From positions 124,001 to 188,000 of the IMG/VR virus record IMGVR_UViG_3300042340_000379: a stretch of DNA of 64,000 nt; one strand, given 5' to 3'. A program made the position numbers and the translations under genes. The notes under the pieces were generated by a model. It saw only the letters and a list, made by a program, of their open reading frames with translations. It made no database searches and was not told the DNA's origin. Position 1 is the first letter of the stretch; every line of letters starts with the position of its first letter. Of the stretch, positions 41,701-63,177 are shown piece by piece.

Positions 41701-42854
41701 GTTCTTTAGAATCAGCCATTAGTAAAGAGGAAGTGTATAAAGGCTATTCTCAAATGGCAGAGCTGGCTGGAGTATTTGATGTTAGTCGTGATGAATCTAA
41801 CATGCTTTCTTTAGCCATGGCAGCTAAACCTGACGGTAAGCAGTCTATCTTCGAGCAGCTTGCTGATTTGTCAGCTGGTCGCGCTAATGTTGAAGAGAAA
41901 TATAACCAAATTTCAGATATTCACCAGGAAATGAGTACTGCTACTGGAACTCGTAAACAGTTTCTAGAGCAGCATCTAGCTCTACTTGAAGGTTCACTTG
42001 ACTCTTATAGACAAGGAATTTCAACAAATGACACCAGCGCAGTAAGAACCGCACTGGCTGAAATTGGAAATAAAGAACGTCAATTTAGAACTGATCAGTT
42101 TAAAAAAGACGAGCGCGGCAGGCGGCTATTAATTCATAGCGCTGGAATGATGCACGTCGCGTCAGGTTCTCAAAGTATGGGCGTGGTCAATACGCTTGGT
42201 CTGTTTGCAGCCCCTGTTGTTGGAGCTGCTCTTATGAGTGGCGCTGGATTAGATGAGCGGCTAGTCCTGGGCGGGTACGATTTAATGCAGGGTCTATCTA
42301 CAGCTGAAGGATTTGCGGATAACAAAATGGCTCAGGCGACTAACAGCATGTTTATCATGAGCCGATTACGCCAGCAAATGGCCGAGCAAGAAAGTCTATT
42401 TCTAGGTTCTGTAAAAGGCGTAGCGACAGAAGCACTTTACACAGGCCTAGCAGGGCTCGCCAGCCAAGCGTCCACCAGCCTTATGCGAGCAGCCGGGGCG
42501 CGGCAGGCAGCAGGAGGTTTAGGATCCGCACTTGCTGAAGCAGTCGTGACAGCGGCTGCTTTAGCTTTTTCTCGTAAAGGAAGCCAGTATGGCGTTCAAG
42601 ACGAGGATTACAGTAGTCTAATGGCGCAATCTTTGTTAGACATGGCTCAGTCTACAGAGAACATGATACAAGCTATGATTGAGAGGGCCCAAGACATTGA
42701 GGTCGAAACAGAAGACCAAATTGTCACGTTTGACTTTGATGCATCTATGGCACCCACAGAATATGAAGAGCGGGTGACTGCTGGGTGGATTGAGTTCTCT
42801 GTTGCCTCTGATGAGTTTGATTCTGTCTACTCTGAAATTGGAAATTACGCTTAA
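32772..42854 (+). CDS. Giant protein with two-barrel RNA polymerase motifs (putative virion RNA polymerase / ejected protein)
   Basis: 3360 aa; GGDFDGD (DFDGD at 39606-39620, residues 2279-2283) preceded by VNRAGGP; hydrophobic Gly/Ala-rich C-terminus; located among virion genes. Confidence 0.7.
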   Translation: MDPLFPELDPALIDNQNSEVREQIRRLEKSTPEDIARQELTTPDLNSIGISRGFRLHYGEVSDRPGTRYNMLGQKIYEPPTLAMESQVGFYEPVSVRANVSLDQSLQVRAVNAIDSINYGRSVLTGQQRTVTSGLNTMFGRQFRSLMYDQQVRAAGLMGLSREDTRALLGEPAVREGLYQDAGFRTPSLESIMENMGTGMPSAERISDINRMGFYADRYADPESVQKLYREVNQLKNALGDGIKSVEKRYAYRKVNGMYEKVLVGLKVGVRNYNDLFDGMGLYSGTSAPAVERETAFNFTVDSKGQVIELNTNRVISGSLMALGPSSISTIVGSSLIGGEGRRQSSSATALGLLATYARSSELEARHGVVDGVFNTMIAQGEYGALGRVFAEALVSRNEKYVASRGLKFGEVAGQMLSSVGHKDFKKGIHELIESISYRGLEYYSSLHTVFKESFDENTARMELFRNRQSLLTAAFDPLLNYTGGEGSRFDGLIDTTMKRVVDLIQSDSSTQRLKIAGQDVDISLFDDLKVAALNMSPTGRSAYDLRKSQVSRSILQLMMSPFLMPHESGYSGSQSSSRLGLFAMSETRGQRGMYELFAISPSKHTHGMKSTKPGEYYKPIGSQSAKSSVMKYIGGFYKFDDTAAKVAEFYETKTLFAGMPSLKRAKLDDIQIHMQKAGYKSSREIIEKYRAEMQLKEDKDIEVLLMPFRKPEQISQRLKNLVGGRPMLEIATGLRRAVMSQSGQQLRSYFSGGDYGVSLDVGKALSGNIPAALNDIQYQQMEQERSRIIAELGLDEKKITPRQQSELSRLLTSRMREIETQFNEGGGYIQGKAARLTMVGMGVNMLSDFMLVNQEYVNNTAFGYLHHSKFRVSATQNVRYEGVGRVTEADPYFDWKTNRLAEVFKAGTSIYLSPTPLKNERAMEILKKTAQSMRSEFLARGISKRESDAQVRRTLQSNFKFLESVDIKDGEVTNATMRAGAYSFDGNDMRFQGELVGSSLRLGMLPTNNRQRLGETGLSGATSLDFFDVKIPGVIRSVSKGLVTVANDINFAPSSGGYEADINFLVTSDIPSGSRSSSLTKGPWSMYESESFWARAREQAIQHSFVSKQTAQEGVFGILSPTAFKGYNYEAGLDILRDAESRRDLLAIPADQTAFLLGIAFMEKGEKGQRLKAAMREYAKTQSLGSSVGLLLEDVNSGSSIEKMRNLMLSTPDIIEFAGGQSLDQMGDYLAQRFETGDFDPIKKSLNRIVGKALDKSVQMEQYVEGQSSLVRTFQEGDFSVRSAGLVADVLNTTRQLIYGGMTVGDDPLQGYALVDKEKGARVDRFIEDKDFRAATLDIAQKMGVRSLLPSQLKLEGALSSLKEGDELYSQVESMLYLMHGHFSTSPLVARASNMLPSRILVAAGSEDAVALEFHYSLNLSKREFGMLRGTGVDIEKFTDLQAAYGVVATHGSANSTSRMMQVISPFSTDKTQAGVAKTMSRLIEGYNDFSGKFKFLGSVGNLSLLDEVVRSMVTGKTDRTLQLMASYDLANRALRHQKGLGQFTEQTVMNVAGAFNPGSLDLDSASFSQLADLANIYGVKGNTKEELAKGLRETGPILGRGIPYYGPSRNPFEIKRMAMARAVIDLSKRQKQKGHGSLVFGVTSDNEDVRDIMKRERLSAYGFGYSDFRQALDLVSDTQTGRLLSDGNGDKDHVQRIAGRLQDHDRSVELMMEKAAGTSDTESFVDVLYKVVSGAQQVIENTERGSDDYKRAERLRSEVYQTKSLLMPFVQTARDGSKGIISLYDPTEMGGQLRFTGTPAIRLGLDVLSKVPAQFEDHISEVVDRQRQIWEILPEFQSIMDRLTTGPIMDANLGEISVIEEMQRLAIQSQEDAALLFGSVMAQRSQGEKIKYPGVSFVAVADYLATPMEAFVGSRVMGTGLDQVVRDAQASLNGEERRNNRWEAERERLLKRAVTHSQSTEKSVQNKFKLAQRRRMELLRQRVNIRKNLNENVGRLKEEQRVIKKTRERVFKQERGANYQAYRLDGLSQRYNHAQAEIYGARDNSQRELRELNPELNRLRKDTKFMQRQFVQNKLHQFVVEGQHVSIFNKEFIAGIGARDGVVQSELRSMIAQAPEGFVEGLSSGEISDQNYYDKFVSVLSKVDQQGQNIYRAELAGIESAMGHALRDGSGSRSDQRQIKKYMGRRAAFNQTQQIGFDFKPQEFAALQKLQSLTGYVNRAGGPSGGSIVNQQHSIQNVERLKNKQVSEGNQLSLALDGNQTALIVSMYGRFGVQGGDFDGDAYQLVFGFRDIQESLVKSINKRNQMEDSKLALELEMGSGEYGRDVLLRRAQLSNQIRVEQQGIDGLIGKLDNQFQMAGEQISQGVRRHVSSLTGVPLSIMLNKDVYSDEQVSNMIEQQRGITPGLTDFGDSYGGEATSYGFLFNDINQDLGSLNGSLGDYLDTKLEGKPYGLDKAQLSQFKQLTEEAMSKLDLVNSNASERAQAFGVELGTLNNLRMSLDTTQKFIQSAAGTVLDMKSFDLMQDAIGYVGTSLIGEGYNAITSMIGRSTLARTLAHGLGAESMVGLDTAALNLGGQIQERLDYLFAGGEKANTSSNIKEKFAVDEIKRTAYFAQEKSQQISGKLTMIQQMIRDSLKPKEAGGLIGAIVDNSADGEAFREKFDRLEKKEERLDALRNFVSTRAVTSMVDTNERGLINAFGAIFLMADYTKESSPEKMLSDKSDRYSVLRQTRELYEKQSSRLQQGKGLSSDLDTITRLRLQDPEFRDKMVNDDGFLIRQTVVDLINSATAQETTSKYLGYDANDRVRQANVIREQYIGALASERGLLDASSDFYFKNEQHQMAMMSALNIKEQDILGYTQGQVQNVFSDSNAAFKALTERTFVESTYLGMGQEDLEFSRNVIQAGRSLEFMEFGNQIAFAPFAAAQSENLVAIEQLMRRGKLDDPALMREVQINSSARLFDAIAKVSTKLTSQYGSLESAISKEEVYKGYSQMAELAGVFDVSRDESNMLSLAMAAKPDGKQSIFEQLADLSAGRANVEEKYNQISDIHQEMSTATGTRKQFLEQHLALLEGSLDSYRQGISTNDTSAVRTALAEIGNKERQFRTDQFKKDERGRRLLIHSAGMMHVASGSQSMGVVNTLGLFAAPVVGAALMSGAGLDERLVLGGYDLMQGLSTAEGFADNKMAQATNSMFIMSRLRQQMAEQESLFLGSVKGVATEALYTGLAGLASQASTSLMRAAGARQAAGGLGSALAEAVVTAAALAFSRKGSQYGVQDEDYSSLMAQSLLDMAQSTENMIQAMIERAQDIEVETEDQIVTFDFDASMAPTEYEERVTAGWIEFSVASDEFDSVYSEIGNYA

Positions 42855-49772: not shown

Positions 49773-50007
49773 TTGGACTCCCTTGAATAGCTATACCCCG
49801 CCCTGAATTACGATCGCCAATCCTATGAACCGCTCGATTGCCAGCAAAAACAGTAGGCGAACCACTAATTGCAAAAAAGTTAGTAATTATATCTCCAACT
49901 GATGAGGCCTTTCTATTGTTGACAAAAACGTTTCCAAAACAACGAGTCACAGGCCTTTTCCCCACAAAAGTTGTCTCTAGATCCCTAAGTCTAGTCCAAG
50001 CTGGCAT
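49756..50007 (-). CDS. PAAR-like spike tip protein (T4 gp5.4-like)
   Basis: NVFVNNRKASSVGD, GSPTVFAGNRAVHRIGD and GSPNVFVN repeats. Confidence 0.8.
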   Translation of the reverse strand: MPAWTRLRDLETTFVGKRPVTRCFGNVFVNNRKASSVGDIITNFFAISGSPTVFAGNRAVHRIGDRNSGRGIAIQGSPNVFVN

Positions 50008-50785
50008 TTGTAAAATCCTTTATAGTCAGACTGTTTTTGATTTGATTATAGAGCTCAGTTTTTAAGTTTGTGCTCAAAGTAAAGTCAGGCATATAATCTA
50101 AAGTATAGCTTGAGAGCCCGTGAGAAGAAGTAAACCCAAAGCTGTAATCAATCATTAGCTTGTCAACAACTTCGATCGCTAACTTCTCGACACTCTTTGT
50201 TTCTACCGTAACCCCATACACAACACGGTCAGGTAGGGCTTTAAGTGCAGCGGGTGTAAGTGGTCTATACACATTTAAGCTCACAAATGGGTAGTCTTCT
50301 AGCAAAATTGTCTCTTCATCGAGAAGTCTCTGCCGTCGAGTTTTTTCAGCAAGTAGTAGTTTCAGTTCCCATTCATAAGGAAGTCCATTGTAAGGCTCGT
50401 TAACAAACCGGGCGACAACACTTTCTGAAAGACTAACCTCATCAGTCTGAGACCACAGCTCAAATGGCCCCTTTTGATAAACTGTTCCGTCATAAGCTTC
50501 TTCAAGCAAAGCAGGAGTCGCAGATGTTTCTTCCGAAAGTAAAACATAACTATGGATAAAATAAGCAAACTTTACTTCGAGTCGGTTAGGCCAAAGCGTC
50601 AGTGAAAGCTTGAATGGCCGATTTGATAAAGCTTCGAGAGACTGAAAGCGGAAAATTTTGTTGTCTAAAAGATTTAACTCATACTGCCATTGCTGATAGA
50701 GAAAGGGGTCGTCTAAAGATTCAGTCCTATAGAAAAGAGGAAACGTGTCTCCCTCAAAGTCAAAATCGCGGAAAGAAATTTGCAT
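49991..50785 (-). CDS. Hypothetical protein, possibly baseplate
   Basis: About 264 aa from ATG 50785; coupled to the PAAR-like gene. Confidence 0.55.
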   Translation of the reverse strand: MQISFRDFDFEGDTFPLFYRTESLDDPFLYQQWQYELNLLDNKIFRFQSLEALSNRPFKLSLTLWPNRLEVKFAYFIHSYVLLSEETSATPALLEEAYDGTVYQKGPFELWSQTDEVSLSESVVARFVNEPYNGLPYEWELKLLLAEKTRRQRLLDEETILLEDYPFVSLNVYRPLTPAALKALPDRVVYGVTVETKSVEKLAIEVVDKLMIDYSFGFTSSHGLSSYTLDYMPDFTLSTNLKTELYNQIKNSLTIKDFTNASLD

Positions 50786-50830
50786 GAAAAATCCCAAGCT
50801 GTACCTCTAAGTATAGCTTGGGATTTTCAT
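50784..50830. terminator. Long hairpin downstream of the parR-like gene, overlapping the next start codon
   Basis: ATGAAAAATCCCAAGCTGTAC / GTATAGCTTGGGATTTTCAT inverted repeat. Confidence 0.55.
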
Positions 50831-50847
50831 CAACAAAAGGTAAACTT

Positions 50848-51138
50848 TTAATCGTCCATATCTAACTGTATATCAGAAAACTCAACCCCTCCTGTAGAAG
50901 GAGAAGATATTTTTGACTGCTGATATTCGTAAGCAGTTGGTGCATAGTTAGCCGAAAATGACGGGCTAGACGATCTAAGTTGGGGTTCCGGCATTTGTTG
51001 AGAAGTTCGATAGCTCCTAAGAAGAAAGGCAAATACTTCAACGTTAGTAACTTTTCTCGAGAATTCTTCTTTGCTTAGCTCCTGCCTGATGTTTTCTAAT
51101 TCTTCTTCTAGTTGACCCGTTAAAGCGATCTTTGCCAT
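50848..51138 (-). CDS. ParR-like centromere-binding adaptor
   Basis: 96 aa directly after parM; N-terminal strand-helix-helix, disordered linker, acidic/hydrophobic tail (FSDIQLDMDD). Confidence 0.6.
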   Translation of the reverse strand: MAKIALTGQLEEELENIRQELSKEEFSRKVTNVEVFAFLLRSYRTSQQMPEPQLRSSSPSFSANYAPTAYEYQQSKISSPSTGGVEFSDIQLDMDD

Positions 51139-51144
51139 CTTATC

Positions 51145-52200
51145 TTAGGCTCCCACTGTTACAGCATGTCGGTTTAAGTTATCCAATGCCATAATGTTAG
51201 CAAAATCAGGGTGCTGAGGAACATAAATTCCAGCATTTGCGGGAAGCCGACCTTTAAACAAGTAAGCACAGCCACCAAACAACATACGACCGGAAGTAGG
51301 AACAAACTGATTAAAGTTGTTTCGAATCTCACCTTGAACTAACTCAAAGAAGTTAGCAAGAGCATGCTTGGTAAGATCGGTGAAGTCGATCATCTCATTG
51401 TTGTCAGCAGGGTAAAAATAGGTAGAGCGCCCATTCTCTCCAGGAATAGGATTAGCCAGCGCAGTCATGACATCATCAAGGTCTAGTTGACCTCCAACAC
51501 GTTGGATCATCAAAGGATTGATTTTAATCATAGAAGCCAAAGCCTTACCACCAGCTAAAGTTGATCCTTTAACTCCATCATAGGAACTACGAAGTAGGAT
51601 GTTGTTGCGAGGGCCGATCGCAGTAATATCCAGTGTGCCGCCGCCAATGTCAGCGCCGATCACATTTCCGACAGAAGGAAGGTGGTTAAGTTCACGAGCC
51701 ATAATAATCGCGTCAACCCCTTCGGGCCGAGGAGCCTCAGGATAAATGCGAACTTTCATGTCAAATGTACCCTTGTCAGACGTATAGGTGTACTCAAAAG
51801 TATCAGTGAGTTTTTCGCGAAGGAACTCGCCTACAGTTCGGCCATCGGTTCGGCGCTTACTTGGGTCAGGTAGACTCCATTGAAGTACAACCTCGTAATT
51901 GGTTTTGTTTCCAATGGGGCCAAGAGTAGAAAGGAGAAAAGGAATAAAGTACTTGGGATCTAGCTTATCGCGGTTAACCAATCCACTCGCGGCGGCACCA
52001 TACTCAGAAGCGCGATCGCCAATATGAAAGCGACCAAAATCCCCCTCAACAATAATAGAGTCGCTGCCAGGGTCAATTGCGTCACCACCAGGAAAGATGG
52101 GAGCAACAATAGATTTTAGATAAATCGGCTGGGTGTGAATCCCATGACTAATAGCCAGAGTAGAAAAGTTGCCAACATCAATAGCGTGCTGAGTTTTCAT
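51145..52200 (-). CDS. parM: ParM/StbA-family actin-like ATPase
   Basis: Phosphate-1 AIDVGNFST, connect PEG, phosphate-2 ADIGGGTLD, adenosine LFGGCA, terminal P.FAN. Confidence 0.9.
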   Translation of the reverse strand: MKTQHAIDVGNFSTLAISHGIHTQPIYLKSIVAPIFPGGDAIDPGSDSIIVEGDFGRFHIGDRASEYGAAASGLVNRDKLDPKYFIPFLLSTLGPIGNKTNYEVVLQWSLPDPSKRRTDGRTVGEFLREKLTDTFEYTYTSDKGTFDMKVRIYPEAPRPEGVDAIIMARELNHLPSVGNVIGADIGGGTLDITAIGPRNNILLRSSYDGVKGSTLAGGKALASMIKINPLMIQRVGGQLDLDDVMTALANPIPGENGRSTYFYPADNNEMIDFTDLTKHALANFFELVQGEIRNNFNQFVPTSGRMLFGGCAYLFKGRLPANAGIYVPQHPDFANIMALDNLNRHAVTVGA

Positions 52201-52263
52201 ACAAAAATTTGGGTAATAAGTGTTCAACAGACTCCCTTAGTATAAGCTAAATTTTTGGGTTGT

Positions 52264-52408
52264 GGGCCATAAAAGGCCCGACGCGGGCCCTAATCGGACT
52301 TTCTAGGGCCCTAAAGGGCCCAACGCGGGACGTGAAGGGCCCTTCACGGGACATAGACGGCCCGACGCGGGCCCTAAAGAGACCAAAAAGGGCCCGTGAA
52401 GGGCCCTA
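52264..52408. repeat. parC-like array 1: about 14 GGGCCC/GGGAC-type boxes at 10-11 bp spacing, upstream of parM
   Basis: gggccataaaa-ggcccgacgc-gggccctaatc-ggactttcta-gggccctaaa-gggcccaacgc-gggacgtgaa-gggcccttcac... Confidence 0.75.
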
Positions 52409-52432
52409 GGCAAACTTGTATCGTACAAAAAC

Positions 52433-52816
52433 CTAAGCCCAGATTACATTCCCAGGGCGAAAGTTGGCATTAGTATCAATGCGCTTAAGCTGCAATCCGG
52501 CTGGCTCTCCTAGCTCTTGCTTAAATTCGCTATAAGAACCAAACTCAATCTTAACGCCCCGCTCCTGGTAATAAGGATCATGCTTGATCTGGGCTCGTAA
52601 ACTCTGCCACTTCTTATATAGATCCTCATTCGTCTGGCGGCTGCACTCGCAAACCCTAAGAGTCTTGTTGTATAAGGCGCGAGGACTAGCTTTTCTATCC
52701 TTCCCGCAGCTAATACATATAATAGAGTAGCGAGCGTCAGAACCGTAATCTCCAACCTCCCATCCATTAACGATTGAAGGAACCTGCTTTGTGGGTCGTC
52801 CGCGATATCGCTTCAT
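52433..52816 (-). CDS. Degenerate phage HNH-family protein with Zn ribbon
   Basis: CISCG..VCEC; YQERGVKI...F..ELG.P....KRIDTNANFRPGNVIWA, compared with the consensus DRIDN.G.Y.P.NCRWA. Confidence 0.65.
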   Translation of the reverse strand: MKRYRGRPTKQVPSIVNGWEVGDYGSDARYSIICISCGKDRKASPRALYNKTLRVCECSRQTNEDLYKKWQSLRAQIKHDPYYQERGVKIEFGSYSEFKQELGEPAGLQLKRIDTNANFRPGNVIWA

Positions 52817-52927
52817 TTTAAGTAAGGGGTAAACGCAACCTCTTTAGTTTAAGTTGTAAGCCGCAATATAGAAAGGGTTTTTAAAAACAACATCAAAATA
52901 AGTGCTACTTTAACTCCACACTATTTC

Positions 52928-52973
52928 AAGAAAGGGGCCGCTAGATCTATTAGATCTAGCGGCCCCTTTTTTT
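52928..52973. terminator. Strong intrinsic terminator, probably bidirectional
   Basis: AAAGGGGCCGCTAGATCTA-T-TAGATCTAGCGGCCCCTTTTTTT. Confidence 0.8.
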
Positions 52974-52986
52974 GAGCAAATCTAGG

Positions 52987-53114
52987 TAAGTATTTATACT
53001 TACGATCACAAAGCTGGAGAAAATATGACGCGGATTTTAAGAGACTATCTTTAACTAAGTATAAATACTTATGATCGCAAAGCTGGAGAAAATATGACGC
53101 GGATTTTAAGAGAC
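52987..53114. repeat. Tandem 59 bp direct repeat (69 bp period), each copy starting with a TAAGTAT-N2-ATACTTA palindrome
   Basis: Copies at 52987-53045 and 53056-53114 differ at 4 positions. Confidence 0.85.
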
Positions 53115-53363
53115 CAATTATGAGGGATATCAACTATGCCCCCCTCCGACTTTGAGAAATTCAAAGCATCGAAGGTACGGGTATGACGAGTTTGCTCACC
53201 ACAATTTTTGTGCGTGAGAACAACTCATCTCTTTGATTGAATGTAATTAAACATTTCACATCAAAGACTTAGTTTATTTCTCATTCACAACACAAGCTAT
53301 CTGTACTTACTCTCTTACATGAATGAGTACAGATAGCCTACCTACCACGCATCTACACACCCA

Positions 53364-55492: not shown

Positions 55493-58400
55493 ATGAAATC
55501 CTTCACCAAATCTCTGAATTCTTTTGTTACCCGCTCCTTCTCTGTGGGTAAGCGCCAAATGATCTCTAAGGTCAAAATCGTTCACTCTAAGCGCGAGTTC
55601 ATCTCGCGTGTTTCTGGCACCTTTCGCCAGCGCTTGAACCCTGCTACTCCAAAGTCCATTTTTGCTTGGGACGATGTTCAGCTCTCCTTAGCCTTTACTT
55701 ATGGCCAAGGTTCTCTAGGAATCAAAGCTGACCGCGCCAACGCTGGCATTGGGTTTGGTAGTGATACCAAACCTAAATCTAAATCTGTTAAGTCCGATTC
55801 CATCAAAATCGCACACACCTTTAAGGAGATCCTCGCCCAAACCAAAGCTACCGCTGTCAAAGTCTTCGAGGCCATTTCCACCGTTTCTAAACTGATTACT
55901 CCCGATCTTCTGCTCTCTTCTACAGGTAAGCAGCTCTATGGAGCTGCTCTTAAAAACCGGATTGCCAAACTTGTTCGTGAGGGCTACGCAGCCCCTGTTT
56001 CTCAACCTGCAGCGGTAAAGGCCGTTGACTTCATGGCGCTTGCTCAAGAGCGCTGCGCCCAAAGCCTTGCTGCGATCGAAGCAGCTATGGGCTTCACATC
56101 CACGGGCACCGTTGTGGCCATGCTTCAATCCGGCCAGGAGCCTGCGCCCATTGCGCGGCAGTCCGCCTCAAATATGGAGAACATCTCATTGTTTGAACTC
56201 AGGGCAAAAGAATTTCCAGCTCCTTCTGTCGAGGAGCTAATGTCTGACCTAAATGGCGATCGCGCCACCCGCGCTGAAAAGTGCAAAGCCATCTTGGCTA
56301 AGCACAACCTCAACACAGTTGGTGAGCTGATCGCTCGCGGCATGGTGTCTCGCACCCGCAAAGACTTCTGGCTCGATAGTGCAAGCACTGCGTTCAGTGT
56401 GATGCTACTGGGCCACACTCTTGGCCAAATGCCCGCGCCTCTGGACTTCAAGGCTGGGAATACCTACCTGGTAGGTTTCCCTCTGTTTGATCGCACCTCT
56501 GGCGACAAGCAGATTTCCCCGTACAAGTGCGTCATAGGAGATATCGATCTCCTGATGGCGTCTGTTCGTAGAGAAGAGCACGACATAAAGAACCTATCTT
56601 CTCCTGCTACCAAGAAGGTGTTTAAGAAGCACTTTAAGGTGCTAGAAGATAACTGCAAAGCCCTGGGCCTGTGGTTGTCTAAGGACGAAGTGGCTAACAT
56701 GGCCGCTGCGTTGGCCATTAATGAAGTGGCTACCAAGCCCACCACTTTCGCGGTGCTGGCTTCCCACCTCTGCGAAGTCCTTGATGCTATGGGCATGATG
56801 CCCAACCGCGTGTATGCGGTGAATGCTGCGTGGAACCTTCCCCGCTACAAAGCGGATCGCGTTATTGTGCGTAAGTTGGTAACCGCACTGCTGCGGGCCC
56901 AAGAGGGCATCGGCATGACAGGGTTCAAGTTCATCGACATGTCCACCAGCGAGCAAACTGGTGAGCTATTTGATGAAGTCGTTATCTGTGGCCAACGCTT
57001 TGTCATGGATGACGAAGGCGTTATCTTTGATGACGCAGGTACATCAAAACGGCTAAACCAGATAATGTTGGCTGCTCCCATTAAGGTAGGCCGCAGTCTA
57101 CACCCCAACGAGTTCTCTATCTTGAGCGCTCACGACGTGTTGTTGTATCTGCTGGACAACATTGTGCTGCCCATGCTCAACCGAAAGGATGTCAAATCTG
57201 ACAAGAGCTTGGAAATCAGCCGTGTTGAGGAAACCAACGCTCGTGCTGCCCAGTCCATCAAATCGTTTATTGGCAAATCCATGCCTCTAAACGAGCGGGC
57301 TGTTGCGCTTGGTGTTGAAGATGCTGCCTCCAGCATTCTGACCAGCGGCGAAATCAGCTGCGTTGTCAAGTGGCATCAATCTCTCTTCCGTCGCAACATT
57401 GCGGCTGAGGGTTCAGCAGAGATCGCCATCTTCAAAGAAGGCATGCTAGTTGGGCCTGATAGTCCCTACAAACGCTCGGCTGATGCTACCGAGTATATGA
57501 TCTTTAGCCAAATGGAGTTAAAGACCTCCACCAATTTCACCGACTATCACCCTCTCATCGAGCCTATGATCGCTCATGGCAAAGTGATTCAGCCTTTTGG
57601 CAACATGAATGCTGTAAGCCTTTCTGCTCACGGTACTCACTATGCCAACCTTGATGTGAGCATTCAGAAAGAAGCTGTCAAAGCTTTCTGGGCTAACCAA
57701 GGCCTTGATGAGCAACAGCTGCGCTCTAAGTTCAACCTTGAAGGTGTAGTCGGTGATGTGTGGATGCACATTGCTGAAGAAACCCTCAACTTCTTGTCCT
57801 ACAAGGGCTCTAAGCGTTTCAAGCGCTCGGCTAACTTGTACGCTCAAGTCACCAGCTTCGCGTTTGAAGAGACCAGCCGCTTCCAGTGGTCTGGTCACGT
57901 TGATCACCAGATCACCGGCCTGGCGCTCAAGGCTGTGTTAGCTCCTAGCTACGTTTTCTCTGGGCCTGGTATGGCCTATATGAACTCGCACAAGCGTGCT
58001 CAATACGAGATGCGCTACCCCTTGGCTGGTGGCATGCATGACTACTACGATCGCGCTGCTGTGTTCAGTAACTTCGCGATTGATGATACTGCTATCATCA
58101 CCAATCCTCTCACGGGCTGGAGCCATATTGACCTGGACATCAAAGTCCGGGAAGGGCAGGAGACTGGCTTGTTTATCGTGAACGAACATGGCCATCAGGT
58201 TCCTCTAAAAGCTGAGCACAATGGTGTGCTTTGCAAAATTCGTTTCCGCACTGTCGATAAGTTCTCCGTTAACGGCGTATTGGAGTGTCGCCTCTTTTAT
58301 AAAGTGTCTGAGTACGACTTCAAACTGCGGGCTGGCTATAAAGCCATGACTACCTATCATGACGGGTCGATCTTTGACCATAACGCCTACGCTCCCGAGT

Positions 58401-60982
58401 GGGACATCATCATCCCTGGTGATGCCAACAAAACCCTCGACCTTTTAACTTGCTTCCTCCCCGAGGCTGCTGAGTCATTCGGTCGCGCTCCTGAGGGCAC
58501 TTTGGTTGATGGCGTTGATGTACGTGCCCTGCTGCGTTCACTTAATGCTGAGGCATTTGGTCGTGAGGGCATCATTAAAGATGCGCCCAACGACAGCCTC
58601 TATGTCAACATGCTCATGTTGAATGAGGGTCGCTACGAGCAACTCCGTAAGTTGTTCATGACCGCATTTGGTCAAGTTATATGGATGAGCGTTGAGTCTG
58701 TAGAAATGCAGATCTTTGTCAACAAATTCTATTCTGCCAACGTTGCTGGTGGTGGCAAATGGCGCGAGCTGTCTGAAGCTGAGCTGGAAACAGTTGCTAA
58801 AGATGGTCTACCCAAGGGTGCTCGCGGCTTCTGCGACACCGCTGATATCAATGACCAGAGCAACATTCTGGTTACCTACACTGAGAACGGGAAGTGCATG
58901 TCCCTTCACCGTCAGTGGGTCTACGCTTCCACGCCCGAGCTTGGCATGTACATGCTAGGTAAGCCTGAGTACACAACTGTGAGCCAGGCCGTTTCTGAAT
59001 CCAGCGTTATGGGCAACGTCATCTATGACCTGGCCCTACGTAGCAACAAAGCTGCGTTGGAATTCGTCAACCGTGGCGAAATCAACCGCGTGCGCTACTC
59101 TCTTATCCATCGCCTAGCAAAAGGCCTTCCTATTGCTATTGATGGCGGCGAAATTCCTGTGATGAAAATCCAGGGCTCGATCGCTGAAATCGTGGGTAGT
59201 TGCAGCGCCAACTTGGCTGCTGCATACGCGGAAGGGCCTAACCAGTTCTTCCAAGTACTCCTGGAAATCTGCCAGGACAAAGTGCTGCGCTTTGAAGCCG
59301 ACAACAGCACCTGGGTTAGCATCTACCTCCCTCTTCTCGCTTCTTACGGCGGGCAGGATCTTGAATCCAACGAAGGCATGACTCTTGCTAGCAAAGTCTA
59401 TGAGTTGATGACCTCTTGGTACAACGGGGCCGACCCTAAGTCTCAGGGCATCAAAGTCATCGCGGGGGAAATCTCCAAGATGATGAATAAGTTGGCCGAT
59501 GGTGGCCGGATGCAGAAGTCTTTGACCTACGGCCCTAAAGGCGTAGGTTTCAAGGTCGCCGCATTGCCCAACATTCCTACTGGGGAAGTGTGGGTCTATG
59601 CTGGCGGTGAAGTCTTTGCCAAAATGCGCAAGCTGTTTGGCAAAGACTTTGCTGAAAACGCCAAAACTGGCGATAGCTACATCGGTCTGGTGCGTGCGCC
59701 TATGACTCGTGTTGCTGTGCTCAAAGTCGTAGTCATCACCAAAGATGACAACCGCGCCTTGGCCTACAAACTCAATGGCGTGCAGGGCTACATCAGCCCA
59801 TTCTCCCAGTATTTCAACATGGGAGACTTTGACGGTGATGGTGACTTGTCTATGGACGTTAGTGATATCGTCCGTAGCGGTGAGCTTCAACAGGACTCTT
59901 TTGCGTCCATGCTCAAGTTCCAGCGGGAAACCCTGGGCTACGACATGATGCTACCCGAGTTCTGGAAGTCTGCTGCACCCGAGCAGTACTACGCCGACCA
60001 CTTCTATGTACAGAGCTACACCTCTGTCATGGCTAAAATCGGTGGGCGCGGCCTGAACTTGGAATCTTCCGAGAAGGCCAACGTCATCACCCGTGCTCAA
60101 CTGCTAGCCGGTGAGCACGGTGCAATCGGTCAGCAGACCGGCTATGTGTCCAGCTCATATCAAACCCAGTTCTTTATCACGCTGGCAGCTGAGATTCTGG
60201 GTCACCACAACGTAGCTGCATTCGAGTGGATTAAAGGCTCCACCTATCAAACCCAGGCCTTGTACGAAGTAGCGTTAGGCGGCTACTCTCCTGATATGTG
60301 CCGCGTGGCGTTTGGTCTTCTTGACCGCGCCTTCCGTTTGAGCACCACTCAAGATTGGTGGCTAAAGCGTGTTGACGCTGAGGTTGCCGGTATGTTGCTT
60401 GACGGTACCAAGCACACAGCTTCTTCTCTCCTAGGTACCGAGCCTATGGATAAAGAGAAGACCCTGTTCACTTCCCTGAGTGAAGGCCAAGTGTTCCCCG
60501 CAATGCAGGCTTGCGGTTTTGGCTGGAATGGCTTTGAGGATGACCGCAACCAAGTGCAACAGTTTGTTAAAGCTGCTGCGCTCGCTGGCGTTGCTAAAAA
60601 GCGTGTCAGCGAAATCAAGAACGATGATGCTGGAATTGGTAGCGGCACCTACCAAAAGCTGGTGAAAACCTACGGCAAGAACATGGCCCTTGTCATGTGT
60701 CTTGCTCAACGTCTAATGGACATCAGCCGTAATAAGGCTGAGTTTGGTAAGGACTACGACAACGAACTCCGCGCTGAACTCGACCAAATGCTCAAAGGTG
60801 TTAAAAGCGATTCTATTTCCGTCGATCTCTATCGTCGGATTGAGAAGACCCTAGACGACTCTGTGTCCGCAGAAGTCGTAAGCTATGACAGCGCTGCTAT
60901 CAACAAGCTTTGCCGCTTTGTTGAAACCGAAGACGCTGCTCCCATTACTCTGGAGGTTGCTGCCCAAGTTATCGCCAATTAA
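55493..60982 (+). CDS. Single-chain two-barrel DNA-dependent RNA polymerase candidate (non-virion / early)
   Basis: 1829 aa; beta'-like LVRAP and NMGDFDGD (DFDGD at 59825-59839, residues 1445-1449); beta-like FKLRAGYKAM...WDIIIP; GGAGAACA RBS. Confidence 0.8.
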   Translation: MKSFTKSLNSFVTRSFSVGKRQMISKVKIVHSKREFISRVSGTFRQRLNPATPKSIFAWDDVQLSLAFTYGQGSLGIKADRANAGIGFGSDTKPKSKSVKSDSIKIAHTFKEILAQTKATAVKVFEAISTVSKLITPDLLLSSTGKQLYGAALKNRIAKLVREGYAAPVSQPAAVKAVDFMALAQERCAQSLAAIEAAMGFTSTGTVVAMLQSGQEPAPIARQSASNMENISLFELRAKEFPAPSVEELMSDLNGDRATRAEKCKAILAKHNLNTVGELIARGMVSRTRKDFWLDSASTAFSVMLLGHTLGQMPAPLDFKAGNTYLVGFPLFDRTSGDKQISPYKCVIGDIDLLMASVRREEHDIKNLSSPATKKVFKKHFKVLEDNCKALGLWLSKDEVANMAAALAINEVATKPTTFAVLASHLCEVLDAMGMMPNRVYAVNAAWNLPRYKADRVIVRKLVTALLRAQEGIGMTGFKFIDMSTSEQTGELFDEVVICGQRFVMDDEGVIFDDAGTSKRLNQIMLAAPIKVGRSLHPNEFSILSAHDVLLYLLDNIVLPMLNRKDVKSDKSLEISRVEETNARAAQSIKSFIGKSMPLNERAVALGVEDAASSILTSGEISCVVKWHQSLFRRNIAAEGSAEIAIFKEGMLVGPDSPYKRSADATEYMIFSQMELKTSTNFTDYHPLIEPMIAHGKVIQPFGNMNAVSLSAHGTHYANLDVSIQKEAVKAFWANQGLDEQQLRSKFNLEGVVGDVWMHIAEETLNFLSYKGSKRFKRSANLYAQVTSFAFEETSRFQWSGHVDHQITGLALKAVLAPSYVFSGPGMAYMNSHKRAQYEMRYPLAGGMHDYYDRAAVFSNFAIDDTAIITNPLTGWSHIDLDIKVREGQETGLFIVNEHGHQVPLKAEHNGVLCKIRFRTVDKFSVNGVLECRLFYKVSEYDFKLRAGYKAMTTYHDGSIFDHNAYAPEWDIIIPGDANKTLDLLTCFLPEAAESFGRAPEGTLVDGVDVRALLRSLNAEAFGREGIIKDAPNDSLYVNMLMLNEGRYEQLRKLFMTAFGQVIWMSVESVEMQIFVNKFYSANVAGGGKWRELSEAELETVAKDGLPKGARGFCDTADINDQSNILVTYTENGKCMSLHRQWVYASTPELGMYMLGKPEYTTVSQAVSESSVMGNVIYDLALRSNKAALEFVNRGEINRVRYSLIHRLAKGLPIAIDGGEIPVMKIQGSIAEIVGSCSANLAAAYAEGPNQFFQVLLEICQDKVLRFEADNSTWVSIYLPLLASYGGQDLESNEGMTLASKVYELMTSWYNGADPKSQGIKVIAGEISKMMNKLADGGRMQKSLTYGPKGVGFKVAALPNIPTGEVWVYAGGEVFAKMRKLFGKDFAENAKTGDSYIGLVRAPMTRVAVLKVVVITKDDNRALAYKLNGVQGYISPFSQYFNMGDFDGDGDLSMDVSDIVRSGELQQDSFASMLKFQRETLGYDMMLPEFWKSAAPEQYYADHFYVQSYTSVMAKIGGRGLNLESSEKANVITRAQLLAGEHGAIGQQTGYVSSSYQTQFFITLAAEILGHHNVAAFEWIKGSTYQTQALYEVALGGYSPDMCRVAFGLLDRAFRLSTTQDWWLKRVDAEVAGMLLDGTKHTASSLLGTEPMDKEKTLFTSLSEGQVFPAMQACGFGWNGFEDDRNQVQQFVKAAALAGVAKKRVSEIKNDDAGIGSGTYQKLVKTYGKNMALVMCLAQRLMDISRNKAEFGKDYDNELRAELDQMLKGVKSDSISVDLYRRIEKTLDDSVSAEVVSYDSAAINKLCRFVETEDAAPITLEVAAQVIAN

Positions 60983-60987
60983 TCGCT

Positions 60988-61141
60988 AGGGCCCTATAGG
61001 GCCCGCAAAAGTCCGATTGGGGCCCAACGCGGGCCCTTTACGTCCCGTGAAAGTCCTTTTAGGGCCCGCGTTGGGCCTTTCATGTCCCGTCGAGGGCCCT
61101 AAACGTCCCGCAAAAGTCCGATTAGGGCCCGTCAAGGGCCC
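60988..61141. repeat. parC-like array 2: phased GGGCCC/GTCCC boxes, inverted relative to array 1
   Basis: AAAGTCCGATTAGGGCCCG is the exact reverse complement of CGGGCCCTAATCGGACTTT at 52284-52302; 10-11 bp period. Confidence 0.75.
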
Positions 61142-61473
61142 AACCCCTATTTTGCTGCGCTCTACCCTGCGCGGTTAGAGGGGGAATGTTAGTTTTATTT
61201 GTTTGTTGTTAGCAGGTTTAGCTAATGGCAGTGGGTCTGTGTGTTATGCGGTTGGGCGGCAGGATGTAGATGCTAATAGGTATTTATGGCAGCACTATTA
61301 TTTAATTGGAGCCTGGTCGCAGCGATCGCGCTGTGTATCTGGCTCGACAAATGATTTGCCGACTGCCGTCCCCTGTGCGCGATGCGTTGGGACGGCAGCG
61401 GGAGAAAGAAACGCAAATTGCCGTGACTTAATGTCCGGCAGTTTGTAATCCGTTGAATTAGAGACTTGCTGCT

Positions 61474-62154: not shown

Positions 62155-62224
62155 GGTTCTATGCAAGCTGCCGTAATCCTACAATAGGGTTGCGGCAGTT
62201 TGTATTCACTCTTGGAGAAATCCC

Positions 62225-63031: not shown

Positions 63032-63177
63032 TTTCCATAAACTGCCACTGGCGATCGCGCTGGCGGCAGTTTGTATTCAATCGAGGCAACCACTACTCAC
63101 CCCTGAGCCTCGCAGGGAATGCCCAAGAAAACCACTTTAATCATTTAGCGCACCGCCGGGAGTAGCGCCCCGGCATT

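What the first reader, a model, noticed from the sequence alone, without database searches (positions are those of the whole stretch)
60988..61141. Second centromere-like array, inverted, 8.6 kb away and right after the polymerase stop
Seen in sequence: the same box vocabulary and 10-11 bp phasing as 52264-52408, with a 19 bp exact reverse-complement match. The two arrays bracket the HNH-like gene, the 59 bp tandem repeat, the early cassettes and the 1829 aa polymerase. Inference: two parC-like sites could loop or silence the early/polymerase region, coupling partition to lysogeny. If the genome ends lie near 53 kb, they would instead sit one on each arm of the linear DNA.
Basis: partly seen in the sequence, partly recalled or inferred. 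Interest (0 to 1): 0.65.

Follow-up and report, generated by a model that had tools for sequence, protein, structure and literature searches.

The report
Seven phased centromere-like arrays, jumbo phage
The flagged repeat is real, but it is one of seven near-identical arrays of helically phased GGGCCC-type boxes on one 26-kb arm of a 208-kb lake-water phage; the first array is the centromere/operator of an actin-like (ParM/Alp7A-type) DNA-segregation operon, so one small adaptor protein probably coats all seven.

Summary
Observation confirmed: 60989-61141 holds 15 boxes (core G-[G/T]-C-C, eight exact GGGCCC) at strictly alternating 10/11-bp steps. It starts 6 nt after the stop of the 1829-aa gene and shares a 19-nt exact reverse-complement match with 52284-52302.

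The "two bracketing arrays" picture is an artefact of the window edge. The 207,855-bp genome has seven such arrays (112 boxes), all between genome 176.3 and 201.9 kb. All are intergenic and all have the same polarity relative to local transcription. A motif-free periodicity scan ranks exactly these seven first.

Array 1 lies directly upstream of a complete type II partition cassette:
- an actin-like ATPase;
- a 96-aa adaptor with a ribbon-helix-helix-like layout, whose acidic tail is predicted to dock on the ATPase (ipSAE 0.64, best control 0.01);
- a terminator.

Best reading (confidence 0.5): the adaptor coats all arrays. Array 1 is the centromere and auto-operator. Arrays 2-7, including the finding, are extra centromere/operator or roadblock sites at the boundaries of ORFan early cassettes. 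This is functionally closest to omega/parS of pSM19035, but with an actin motor.

Binding is inferred, not shown. Close relatives keep the arrays; more distant relatives with the same gene order lack them. I rate it a new variant of a known kind.

The parts
60989..61141 (+). Array 2 (the finding): 15 phased boxes over 153 bp, 6 nt after the stop of the 1829-aa gene
   Evidence: steps alternate 10/11 throughout; 8 exact GGGCCC. Polarity (GTCC, TTAGGGCCCG) runs with plus-strand transcription. A roughly 95-97% identical lake strain (run X7) keeps it, with spacer changes and unchanged boxes.
52264..52406 (-). Array 1: 14 phased boxes over 143 bp, directly upstream of the actin-like gene; parC-like centromere/operator
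   Evidence: Relatives L005 (99% identical Alp) and L002 (83%) keep GGGCCC boxes with differing spacers.
52239..52245 (-). TTATACT, a -10-like element 18 nt downstream of the last box of array 1 and about 40 nt upstream of the alp ATG
   Evidence: (tagc)TTATACT is conserved in L002, L003 and L005; TATACT is also present upstream of alp in L057 and L060.
51145..52200 (-). Actin-like ATPase (ParM/Alp7A-like); ATG at 52200 (the ORF list gives a TTG at 52227)
   Evidence: Pfam ALP_N 4.7e-5 (24.1 bits, below the 26.3 cut-off) and Alp7A_like_C 8.7e-5 (22.8 bits, above the 22 cut-off). PHROG 691 'partition protein' 3.7e-8. Foldseek top hits are Ta0583, Alp7A 5ec0 and ParMs at E 1e-9 to 1e-5, on a low-confidence model (pLDDT 54). 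Actin-fold motifs DVGNFST, DIGGGTLD and GGCAY are visible in the translation.
50848..51138 (-). 96-aa ParR/Alp7R-like adaptor: N-terminal strand MAKIALTG, two helices, disordered linker, acidic tail EFSDIQLDMDD
   Evidence: sequence. AF2 gives helices at 8-23 and 32-48 and a disordered rest. The tail (residues 75-96) is predicted to bind the actin-like protein: ipSAE 0.64 vs best control 0.01, partner pLDDT 54-55, at least 68% contact agreement. A gene of this size follows alp in all relatives. No Pfam RHH hit; Atlas RHH neighbours score only 0.82-0.83.
50788..50827 (-). Intrinsic terminator-like hairpin closing the alp-parR operon
   Evidence: Inverted repeat I19, 17-nt arms, 94% complementary; sequence with T-run.
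55493..60982 (+). 1829-aa putative YonO/crAss-type two-barrel RNA polymerase whose stop abuts array 2
   Evidence: GDFDGDGD at residues 1444-1451. 24 of 30 Atlas look-alike clusters carry PF05183 RdRP (scores 0.92-0.93). No Pfam or PHROG hit. Homologues at 37-46% identity sit in syntenic phage contigs.

Best explanation
The element is a lake-water jumbo myovirus of about 208 kb, probably a cyanophage. It carries a type II (actin-type) DNA-segregation cassette: array 1, then an Alp7A/ParM-like ATPase, then a 96-aa adaptor with a ribbon-helix-helix-like layout, then a terminator.

Proposed mechanism:
1. Adaptor dimers bind the G-[G/T]-C-C boxes.
2. The boxes recur every 10.5 bp, so all sit on one face of the helix. 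GC boxes alternate with A/T spacers, which favours bending. Each 143-226-bp array (14-22 boxes) would therefore be coated into a ParR/parC-like solenoid.
3. The acidic tails of the bound adaptors capture the actin-like filament.
4. At array 1 this complex would be both the centromere and the auto-operator of the alp operon.
5. The array in the finding (array 2) and arrays 3-7 are further copies of the same binding platform. They sit at the boundaries of the plus-strand early ORFan cassettes.
6. They would give the filament six more attachment points on the same 26-kb arm.
7. They abut stop codons, terminators, -10-like elements or start codons, so they would also act as operators or roadblocks that insulate or time those cassettes.

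Shown computationally: the array anatomy, the genome-wide count and placement, the cassette composition, the predicted tail-ATPase contact, and array conservation in close relatives.

Inferred: that the 96-aa protein binds the boxes, that the same protein binds all seven arrays, and what arrays 2-7 do.
For: - Seven arrays and no others; 112 boxes; steps of 10 and 11 alternate (53 x 11, 52 x 10); G at box position 2 in 112/112 and CC in 109-110/112.
- All arrays are intergenic and co-oriented with transcription.
- Array 1 lies immediately upstream of a conserved TATACT and the alp-parR operon.
- Actin-like identity of the ATPase.
- Adaptor layout, and a predicted docking of its tail on the ATPase: 0.64 vs 0.01 control. 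This mark was reached by 51 of 78 solved complexes and 2 of 108 mismatched pairs.
- Between strains and relatives the boxes stay while the spacers change (L002, L005, X7).
- The adaptor's N-terminal strand differs where the upstream repeats differ: AKIALTG/AKIVVKG go with GGGCCC arrays, whereas TRVHLTD and NYRISD go with no GGGCCC.
- The flanking genes of the arrays are not paralogous, so the arrays are kept for their own sake.
- Precedents: Alp7R is an RHH protein that binds nine repeats in alp7C (bioRxiv 10.1101/098954). R1 parC has two sets of five iterons (PMC2241845). pSM19035 omega binds six parS arrays that overlap promoters (PMC9499535). A ParMR pair without parC-like repeats does not bind its own promoter DNA (bioRxiv 10.1101/2025.06.27.661541).
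Against: - No direct evidence that the 96-aa protein binds DNA. It has no Pfam RHH hit and no PDB sequence hit, and Atlas RHH neighbours are only leads at 0.82-0.83.
- The adaptor/array covariation rests on three lineages only.
- Distant relatives with the same alp-parR synteny (L057, L060, L055) have no phased arrays at all. A relative with 60% identity in the polymerase C-terminus has no array after the stop. The arrays are therefore dispensable for the conserved Alp function.
- A conserved TTTGTAC-type palindrome next to array 1 could be the ancestral adaptor site.
- Phased GGGCCC arrays also occur beside unrelated genes in other viral contigs, for example upstream of a primase-helicase.
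- Only array 1 is linked to the par genes.
- The docking prediction may reflect memory of the solved ParM-ParR peptide complex (4a62).
Confidence: 0.5

Rival explanations
1. The arrays are primarily transcription-control platforms of a seven-unit regulon. They would be operator, activator or insulator arrays for host RNA polymerase or the phage's own YonO-like polymerases, bound by a factor other than the 96-aa protein. The alp operon would simply be one regulated unit, and the arrays would have no centromere role.
For: - All seven arrays lie at unit boundaries with the same polarity relative to transcription.
- Intrinsic terminators precede arrays 4, 5 and 6.
- -10-like TATACT, TAAAAT or TGGTAAAAT elements lie 15-20 nt after the last box of arrays 1, 5 and 6.
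- Six of the seven arrays have no par gene nearby.
- The phage encodes two giant GDFDGD polymerases that may need their own control sites.
Against: - No other DNA-binding protein was identified. The ten largest right-arm ORFs have no Pfam or PHROG hit.
- No shared promoter motif follows the arrays, and the sigma-70 scan found none there.
- Arrays 2 and 7 are squeezed between a stop codon and the next gene (array 7 ends 15 nt before an ATG), leaving no room for a promoter.
- 14-22 phased boxes is far more than typical operators need, and matches segrosome-type coating.
Confidence: 0.25
2. The arrays are replication-origin iterons, giving multiple origins on the early arm.
For: Tandem 11-bp GGGCCCTGTTT repeats sit upstream of a Toprim/DnaB-like primase-helicase in unrelated viral contigs L047 and L012. 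A/T-rich stretches follow arrays 5-7.
Against: - Seven copies within 26 kb.
- No initiator, primase or helicase gene next to any array.
- Array 1 is positioned exactly as a parC, upstream of the actin-like operon.
- The arrays are absent from relatives that share the replication and early architecture.
Confidence: 0.05
3. The arrays act as RNA (attenuators, terminators or processing sites formed by GGGCCC hairpins) or encode heptad-repeat peptides.
For: - Array 2 as RNA folds at -87 kcal/mol, z = -5.0 against shuffles.
- The first two boxes of array 1 plus TTTTT score as a terminator.
- Two of three frames are open on both strands, giving GP-x-K-V-L-L repeats.
Against: - Strict 10/11 alternation over up to 226 bp is a property of the B-DNA helix, not of RNA folding or of a reading frame.
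- Box order differs between arrays, so there is no common fold.
- There is no Rfam match.
- There are no consistent start codons, stops occur in every array-spanning frame of arrays 1, 5 and 7, and phase slips occur in arrays 1 and 5.
- GGGCCC shows no synonymous variation, which coding Gly-Pro would allow.
Confidence: 0.05
4. One reading: two parC-like sites pair or loop to silence the region between them, or mark the two arms of a linear genome.
For: Arrays 1 and 2 are inverted relative to each other and do flank the divergent early control region and the polymerase gene.
Against: Five more arrays continue rightwards. The inversion follows gene orientation. The record's ends lie elsewhere and overlap by 145 bp.
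Confidence: 0.03

Closest known systems
Type II partition loci: Alp7ARC of Bacillus plasmid pLS20 and ParMRC of plasmid R1
   Same: - Gene order: iteron array, actin-like ATPase, small adaptor.
- The array lies just upstream of the operon's promoter-like element.
- The adaptor has an N-terminal strand-helix-helix layout and a C-terminal tail predicted to dock on the ATPase.
- The iterons are helically phased direct repeats. R1 has 2 x 5 iterons (PMC2241845); alp7C has nine repeats (bioRxiv 10.1101/098954).
   Different: - Seven arrays per replicon instead of one, with 14-22 boxes each (112 in all).
- A palindromic GGGCCC core alternates with weaker G-T-C-C boxes in a 21-bp super-unit.
- The host replicon is a 208-kb tailed phage with no plasmid replication genes identified.
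- Sequence similarity to Alp7A is only at Pfam-threshold level.
omega (RHH ParB)/parS of plasmid pSM19035
   Same: One small centromere-binding protein is proposed to coat several arrays of short contiguous repeats at the heads of different transcription units, combining partition and global regulation. pSM19035 has six parS sites of 7-10 heptads that overlap the promoters of copS, delta and omega (PMC9499535).
   Different: - The motor there is a Walker-type ParA, not an actin-like protein.
- The repeats there are 7 bp and contiguous, not 10.5-bp phased.
- In pSM19035 the regulated genes are plasmid maintenance genes; here they are phage ORFans.
- Regulation here is inferred only.
AlpAC/alpS of Corynebacterium prophage CGP3
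   Same: A phage-encoded actin-like protein with a DNA-binding adaptor that recognises sites near its own operon. It is used for phage DNA transport and replication rather than plasmid inheritance (PMC4446434, PMC5539076).
   Different: No sequence relationship was tested here. This report did not check whether multiple long phased arrays occur in CGP3. CGP3 is an integrated prophage; this element has no recognisable integrase.
Multi-site centromere/regulator systems with ParB-type proteins (RK2 KorB with its OB sites; N15 SopB with four dispersed sopC sites). Recalled from general knowledge, not checked here.
   Same: Partition-protein binding sites are dispersed over a replicon, often in promoter regions, linking segregation and gene control.
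   Different: Those use HTH ParB proteins, single palindromic sites and ParA motors. Here there are long phased arrays and an actin motor.

Membership tests
Type II (ParMRC / Alp7ARC) partition locus | Actin-fold NTPase (ParM/Alp) | tested here: met
   Pfam Alp7A_like_C 22.8 bits (cut-off 22) and ALP_N 24.1 bits (cut-off 26.3, just below). PHROG 691 'partition protein' 3.7e-8. Foldseek top hits are Ta0583, Alp7A and ParMs, E 1e-9 to 1e-5, on a pLDDT-54 model. Phosphate-1, phosphate-2 and adenosine motifs are present.
Type II (ParMRC / Alp7ARC) partition locus | Small adaptor gene immediately downstream of the ATPase, with a ribbon-helix-helix DNA-binding domain | tested here: inconclusive
   Position and size are met in this phage and six relatives. 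The AF2 monomer shows an extended N-terminus plus two helices. There is no Pfam RHH hit and no PDB sequence hit. Atlas RHH_6, MetJ and RHH_1 neighbours score only 0.82-0.83.
Type II (ParMRC / Alp7ARC) partition locus | The adaptor's C-terminal tail binds the ATPase | tested here: met
   Complex prediction: ipSAE 0.64 (runs 0.62-0.67) vs best control 0.01; partner pLDDT at least 54; at least 68% contact agreement; interface at adaptor residues 75-96. This is a model-based result only. Solved ParM-ParR peptide complexes exist, so the pass may be partly from memory.
Type II (ParMRC / Alp7ARC) partition locus | Centromere of tandem, helically phased iterons next to or overlapping the operon promoter | tested here: met
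   Array 1: 14 boxes at 10/11-bp steps, ending 18 nt before a conserved TTATACT and 64 nt before the ATG.
Type II (ParMRC / Alp7ARC) partition locus | The adaptor binds the iterons; the locus stabilises a replicon | not testable with these tools
   Needs EMSA, footprinting or ChIP and plasmid-stability or imaging assays.
omega/parS-type centromere-binding global regulator (pSM19035, type Ib) | Walker-type ParA motor partnered with the RHH protein | tested here: not met
   The motor gene next to the adaptor is actin-like, not a Walker ATPase. So this is not a member of the family; the resemblance is functional only.
omega/parS-type centromere-binding global regulator (pSM19035, type Ib) | Several repeat arrays overlapping the promoters of different operons | tested here: inconclusive
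   There are seven arrays at unit boundaries, all co-oriented. -10-like elements follow arrays 1, 5 and 6, but arrays 2 and 7 leave no room for a promoter, and no sigma-70 promoter was scored there. No transcript data are available; no RNA runs hold the phage.
Replication-origin iterons | Adjacent initiator or primase-helicase gene and a single origin context | tested here: not met
   The flanking ORFs have no Pfam or PHROG hit, and there are seven copies. The comparison arrays in L047 do sit beside a primase-helicase.
Known structured RNA families (Rfam 15) | Match to a covariance model at the gathering score | tested here: not met
   No match in the window or in the 20 kb to its right.

The most novel reading that the evidence does not exclude
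A phage actin-segregation adaptor has been expanded into an organiser of a whole genome arm. Seven solenoid-forming arrays (112 phased boxes) would turn the 26-kb early arm into a multi-centromere. At the same time they would act as protein roadblocks or insulators that gate the phage's own YonO-like RNA polymerases from one ORFan cassette to the next. Intracellular positioning of the genome and the temporal programme would then be run by one 96-aa protein. This would be a type II counterpart of omega/parS or KorB, so far undescribed for actin-type systems or for jumbo phages.
Probability: 0.2. Interest if true: 0.8.

Novelty: new variant of a known kind. Interest (0 to 1): 0.62.

Why it matters
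Type II (actin) partition systems are textbook one-centromere machines. Here the same kind of iteron platform is copied seven times along the early arm of a jumbo phage that also carries two giant single-chain RNA polymerases.

If the adaptor binds all arrays, this is a natural example of a centromere protein recruited as a genome-wide regulator or insulator in a virus. It would also be a tractable system: one 96-aa protein and one 4-bp core motif. It could be used to ask how phages position and time large genomes in cyanobacteria-like hosts.

The "bracketing pair" is an edge effect of the 64-kb window.

Tried and rejected
- Phage and plasmid collections (blastn of 50800-52500): no match.
- IMG/VR scan with a strict array pattern and with the Alp protein: nothing.
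- Looser three-box pattern in IMG/VR: 49 hits, mostly high-GC chance hits. The few real arrays sit next to a primase-helicase, GP88 or ribonucleotide reductase, not par genes.
- Two metagenome scans: zero hits, then five chance hairpins in high-GC contigs.
- Sigma-70 promoter scan: no promoter scored at the arrays.
- Shared downstream motif (TTATACT and others): not enriched after arrays 2-7.
- Profile search of the adaptor alignment, and sequence search of the actin-like protein (Alp), against PDB: no meaningful hit.
- AF2 models are of modest confidence: adaptor pLDDT 62, Alp pLDDT 54.
- Paralogy of array-flanking genes: none.
- Coding reading of the arrays: rejected.
- RNA reading: no Rfam hit, and the fold stability is explained by the palindromic boxes.
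- Integrase and resolvase searches: nothing over the cut-offs, so no statement on lysogeny is possible.
- No RNA-seq run holds the phage, so transcription around the arrays could not be examined.
- TTTGTAC-type motifs are not clustered elsewhere in this genome or in the relatives.

Full report
**1. What the element is**

The window is bases 124001-188000 of a single 207,855-bp viral record. IMG/VR classes the record as linear, and CheckV estimates it as 97% complete. GC content is 45%.

- The record's ends overlap by 145 bp, differing only in a G10/G11 run. The assembly therefore closes on itself or has a short terminal repeat.
- It is a tailed phage. It has a tail sheath (PHROG 30392, 3e-52), a Mu-type portal (PF06074, 1.7e-13) and a lysozyme/M23 tail protein.
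- The octamer GCGATCGC occurs 37 times; I estimate about two by chance. This fits a cyanobacterial host, which is an inference.
- Only lake-water metagenomes hold the sequence, and none is an RNA library.

**2. The observation**

Positions 60989-61141 read as 15 boxes with a G-[G/T]-C-C core, eight of them exact GGGCCC. Centre-to-centre steps alternate 10 and 11 bp without exception.

- The first box begins 6 nt after the TAA stop of the 1829-aa ORF.
- The 19-nt exact reverse-complement match to the first array is confirmed: 52284-52302 against 61113-61131.
- In the window, 15 of 21 GGGCCC sites fall in the two clusters. The whole window would hold 9.5 +/- 2.7 by chance.

**3. Seven arrays, not two**

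A scan of the whole genome shows seven arrays.

| Array | Genome coordinates | Boxes | In window? |
|---|---|---|---|
| A1 | 176264-176406 | 14 | yes (52264-52406) |
| A2 (the finding) | 184989-185141 | 15 | yes (60989-61141) |
| A3 | 188988-189140 | 15 | no |
| A4 | 191035-191208 | 17 | no |
| A5 | 193271-193496 | 22 | no |
| A6 | 196598-196750 | 15 | no |
| A7 | 201785-201927 | 14 | no |

- Together they hold 112 boxes and 105 steps: 53 of 11 bp and 52 of 10 bp.
- Only two phase slips occur: 11,11 in A1 and 10,10 in A5.
- G at box position 2 is invariant (112/112). The two C positions hold in 109 and 110 of 112 boxes. Position 3 is G in 82 boxes and T in 30.
- 176 of 202 intra-array GGGCCC pairs are in phase modulo 21, against 14% expected.
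- A motif-free scan for 10.5-bp GC periodicity ranks exactly these seven places first (power 3.9-7.5; next best 1.6).
- Outside the arrays, GGGCCC occurs at roughly the chance rate: 32 sites in 208 kb.
- The arrays are polar: GTCC 29 against GGAC 2, and TTAGGGCCC 28 against GGGCCCTAA 11, when each array is read in the local direction of transcription.
- GC boxes alternate with A/T-rich spacers at the helical repeat. From general knowledge of DNA mechanics, this pattern favours directional bending or wrapping (inference).

**4. Context of the arrays**

All seven arrays are intergenic.

- **A1** is on the minus strand, between an HNH-like ORF (PHROG HNH endonuclease, 7e-9) and the actin-like gene.
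- **A2-A7** are on the plus strand, inside the uninterrupted plus-strand block that runs from about genome 177.4 kb to the end of the record.
- The inversion of A2 relative to A1 therefore follows the strand switch at about window 53 kb.
- Intrinsic terminators precede A4, A5 and A6.
- A2, A3 and A7 follow the upstream stop codon by 6, 48 and 2 nt.
- -10-like hexamers lie 15-20 nt after the last box of three arrays: TATACT at A1, TAAAAT at A5 and TGGTAAAAT at A6.
- A7 ends only 15 nt before the next ATG.
- The ten largest ORFs of the right arm have no Pfam or PHROG hit.
- The flanking ORFs are not paralogous. The arrays, not gene cassettes, are what is repeated.

**5. The cassette at array 1**

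*The ATPase.* ORF 51145-52200 (minus strand) is an actin-like ATPase.
- Pfam Alp7A_like_C scores above its cut-off and ALP_N just below its own.
- PHROG "partition protein" scores 3.7e-8.
- The three actin-fold nucleotide-binding motifs are visible in the translation.
- Foldseek on a low-confidence model returns only actin-like proteins at the top: Ta0583, Alp7A 5ec0, several ParMs and R1 ParM with the ParR peptide.

*The adaptor.* The next gene (50848-51138, minus strand) encodes 96 residues.
- It has a short N-terminal strand (MAKIALTG), two helices (8-23 and 32-48 in the AF2 model), a low-complexity linker and an acidic tail.
- The tail is predicted to dock on the ATPase with ipSAE 0.64 against a best control of 0.01. 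Partner pLDDT is 54-55 and at least 68% of contacts agree between runs. In calibration, this mark was reached by 51 of 78 solved complexes and 2 of 108 mismatched pairs.
- The prediction supports binding but does not prove it, and it may draw on known ParM-ParR complexes.

*The end of the operon.* A terminator-like hairpin closes the operon at 50788-50827.

This is the anatomy of a type II partition locus. An RHH fold for the adaptor is likely but was not demonstrated.

**6. Relatives**

| Relative | Similarity | What is seen |
|---|---|---|
| L005 | 99% Alp identity | Array 1 kept, boxes conserved |
| L002 | 83% Alp identity | Array kept, boxes conserved, spacers different |
| Strain in run X7 | about 95-97% identical | Array 2 kept after the polymerase stop with three spacer changes and intact boxes; downstream cassettes rearranged |
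| L003 | 62% Alp identity | No GGGCCC; other repeats instead; adaptor N-terminal strand differs (TRVHLTD) |
| L004, L057 (172-kb contig), L060 | 37-39% | Same gene order kept: alp, adaptor, a conserved ~265-aa ORF (seen in L004 and L057), divergent early region, giant polymerase. No phased arrays anywhere in the stretches seen. Adaptor begins NYRISD |
| L061 | 60% in the polymerase C-terminus | No array after the stop codon |

The arrays are therefore a recent, lineage-specific elaboration on a conserved Alp module. Box sequence appears to track the adaptor's N-terminal strand, but this rests on three lineages only.

**7. Interpretation**

The most economical reading is that the adaptor binds the boxes and coats every array.
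- A1 would be the centromere and auto-operator.
- A2-A7 would be extra platforms that multiply filament attachment points, and that act as operators or roadblocks at cassette boundaries.
- Functionally this resembles omega/parS of pSM19035, where one RHH centromere protein binds six repeat arrays that overlap promoters (PMC9499535). The motor here is actin-like, so this element is not a member of that family.
- Alp7R/alp7C (nine repeats; bioRxiv 10.1101/098954) and R1 ParR/parC (two sets of five iterons; PMC2241845) are the closest family members. They have a single centromere.
- Phage use of an actin-like system has a precedent in CGP3 AlpAC (PMC4446434, PMC5539076).
- A cyanobacterial ParMR pair that lacks parC-like repeats does not bind its own promoter DNA (bioRxiv 10.1101/2025.06.27.661541). 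This underlines the diagnostic value of the repeats.

Rivals considered, with the evidence given in their own sections:
- a separate transcription factor;
- origin iterons;
- an RNA or peptide reading;

The strict helical phasing and the invariance of the box against variable spacers point to recognition of double-stranded DNA. There is no Rfam match and the arrays are not credibly coding.

**8. Limits**

- No binding or expression data exist.
- Adaptor-array specificity, the role of arrays 2-7 and the lifestyle of the phage are all inferred. No integrase reaches the cut-off.
- Other phased GGGCCC arrays occur in unrelated viral contigs next to non-partition genes. The motif alone is therefore not diagnostic.

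**9. Verdict**

I rate this a new variant of a known kind. Interest is moderate to high, because seven long phased arrays tied to an actin-type partition module on a jumbo phage have, to my knowledge, not been described, and the hypothesis is directly testable.

Noticed in passing
window 55493-60982 (+) and 32772-42854 (+): Two giant ORFs (1829 and 3360 aa) each carry a GDFDGD motif. Atlas look-alikes of the 1829-aa protein are mostly PF05183 RdRP clusters, 24 of 30. These look like YonO/crAss-gp66-type single-chain RNA polymerases. The larger one lies among virion genes, so it may be a packaged early polymerase. Homologues in relatives are fused to helicase, NADAR and macro domains.
   Followed up: partly
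window 52987-53045 and 53056-53114: Two tandem copies of a 59-nt element sit at the strand-divergence point. The element begins TAAGTAT(T/A)TATACTTA and ends GACGCGGATTTTAAG. Its core is conserved in L003, L004, L057 (about 5860-5915) and L060 (about 1845-1905). It is a candidate early promoter or origin. The ORF called at 52921-53133 (-) over it is probably spurious.
   Followed up: partly
window 52412-52431: The palindrome AAACTTGTATCGTACAAAAA lies between the HNH-like gene and array 1. TTTGTAC...GTACAAA equivalents sit at the same place upstream of alp in L002, L003, L004, L057 and L060. It could be the ancestral adaptor site or the site of another regulator. A few more copies occur in the genome.
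   Followed up: partly
window 49991-50797 (-): A 268-aa ORF with no Pfam or PHROG hit always follows the adaptor gene (L002, L004, L057). It may be a conserved third gene of the Alp cassette.
   Followed up: no
window 61435-61454, 62192-62211, 63063-63082: The cassette-boundary repeat GCGGCAGTTTGTATTCA lies about 30 nt upstream of start codons. The strain in run X7 lacks exactly the 871 bp between the last two copies and has about 2 kb of different sequence after array 2. The early arm is therefore a mosaic of swappable ORFan cassettes. L057 has analogous hairpins ending in CGGCGGTTTGATTT between its cassettes.
   Followed up: partly
window 61017-61178 (+); L001 946-1143 and 3018-3338: The 21-bp array unit leaves two of three frames open on both strands, which generates spurious ORFs encoding GP-x-K-V-L-L heptads. 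These were the only 'paralogues' among right-arm ORFs in an all-against-all blastp. Gene callers may annotate them as proteins.
   Followed up: yes
loci L012 (811-895), L047 (847-930), L017, L027, L033, L006, L030: Unrelated IMG/VR contigs carry their own phased GGGCCC arrays. One example is eight tandem GGGCCCTGTTT units upstream of a Toprim/DnaB-like primase-helicase, which looks like an origin. Others lie near GP88 and ribonucleotide reductase genes.
   Followed up: partly
genome ends (G000:C1 1-145 and 207711-207855): The record's two ends share 145 bp, differing only by G10 vs G11, although IMG/VR classes the record as linear without end repeats.
   Followed up: yes
window 52433-52816 (-): A 127-aa HNH-endonuclease-like ORF (PHROG 374, 7e-9) lies between the divergent control region and array 1. 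It is present in L002, L003 and L005 but absent at this position in L057 and L060.
   Followed up: no
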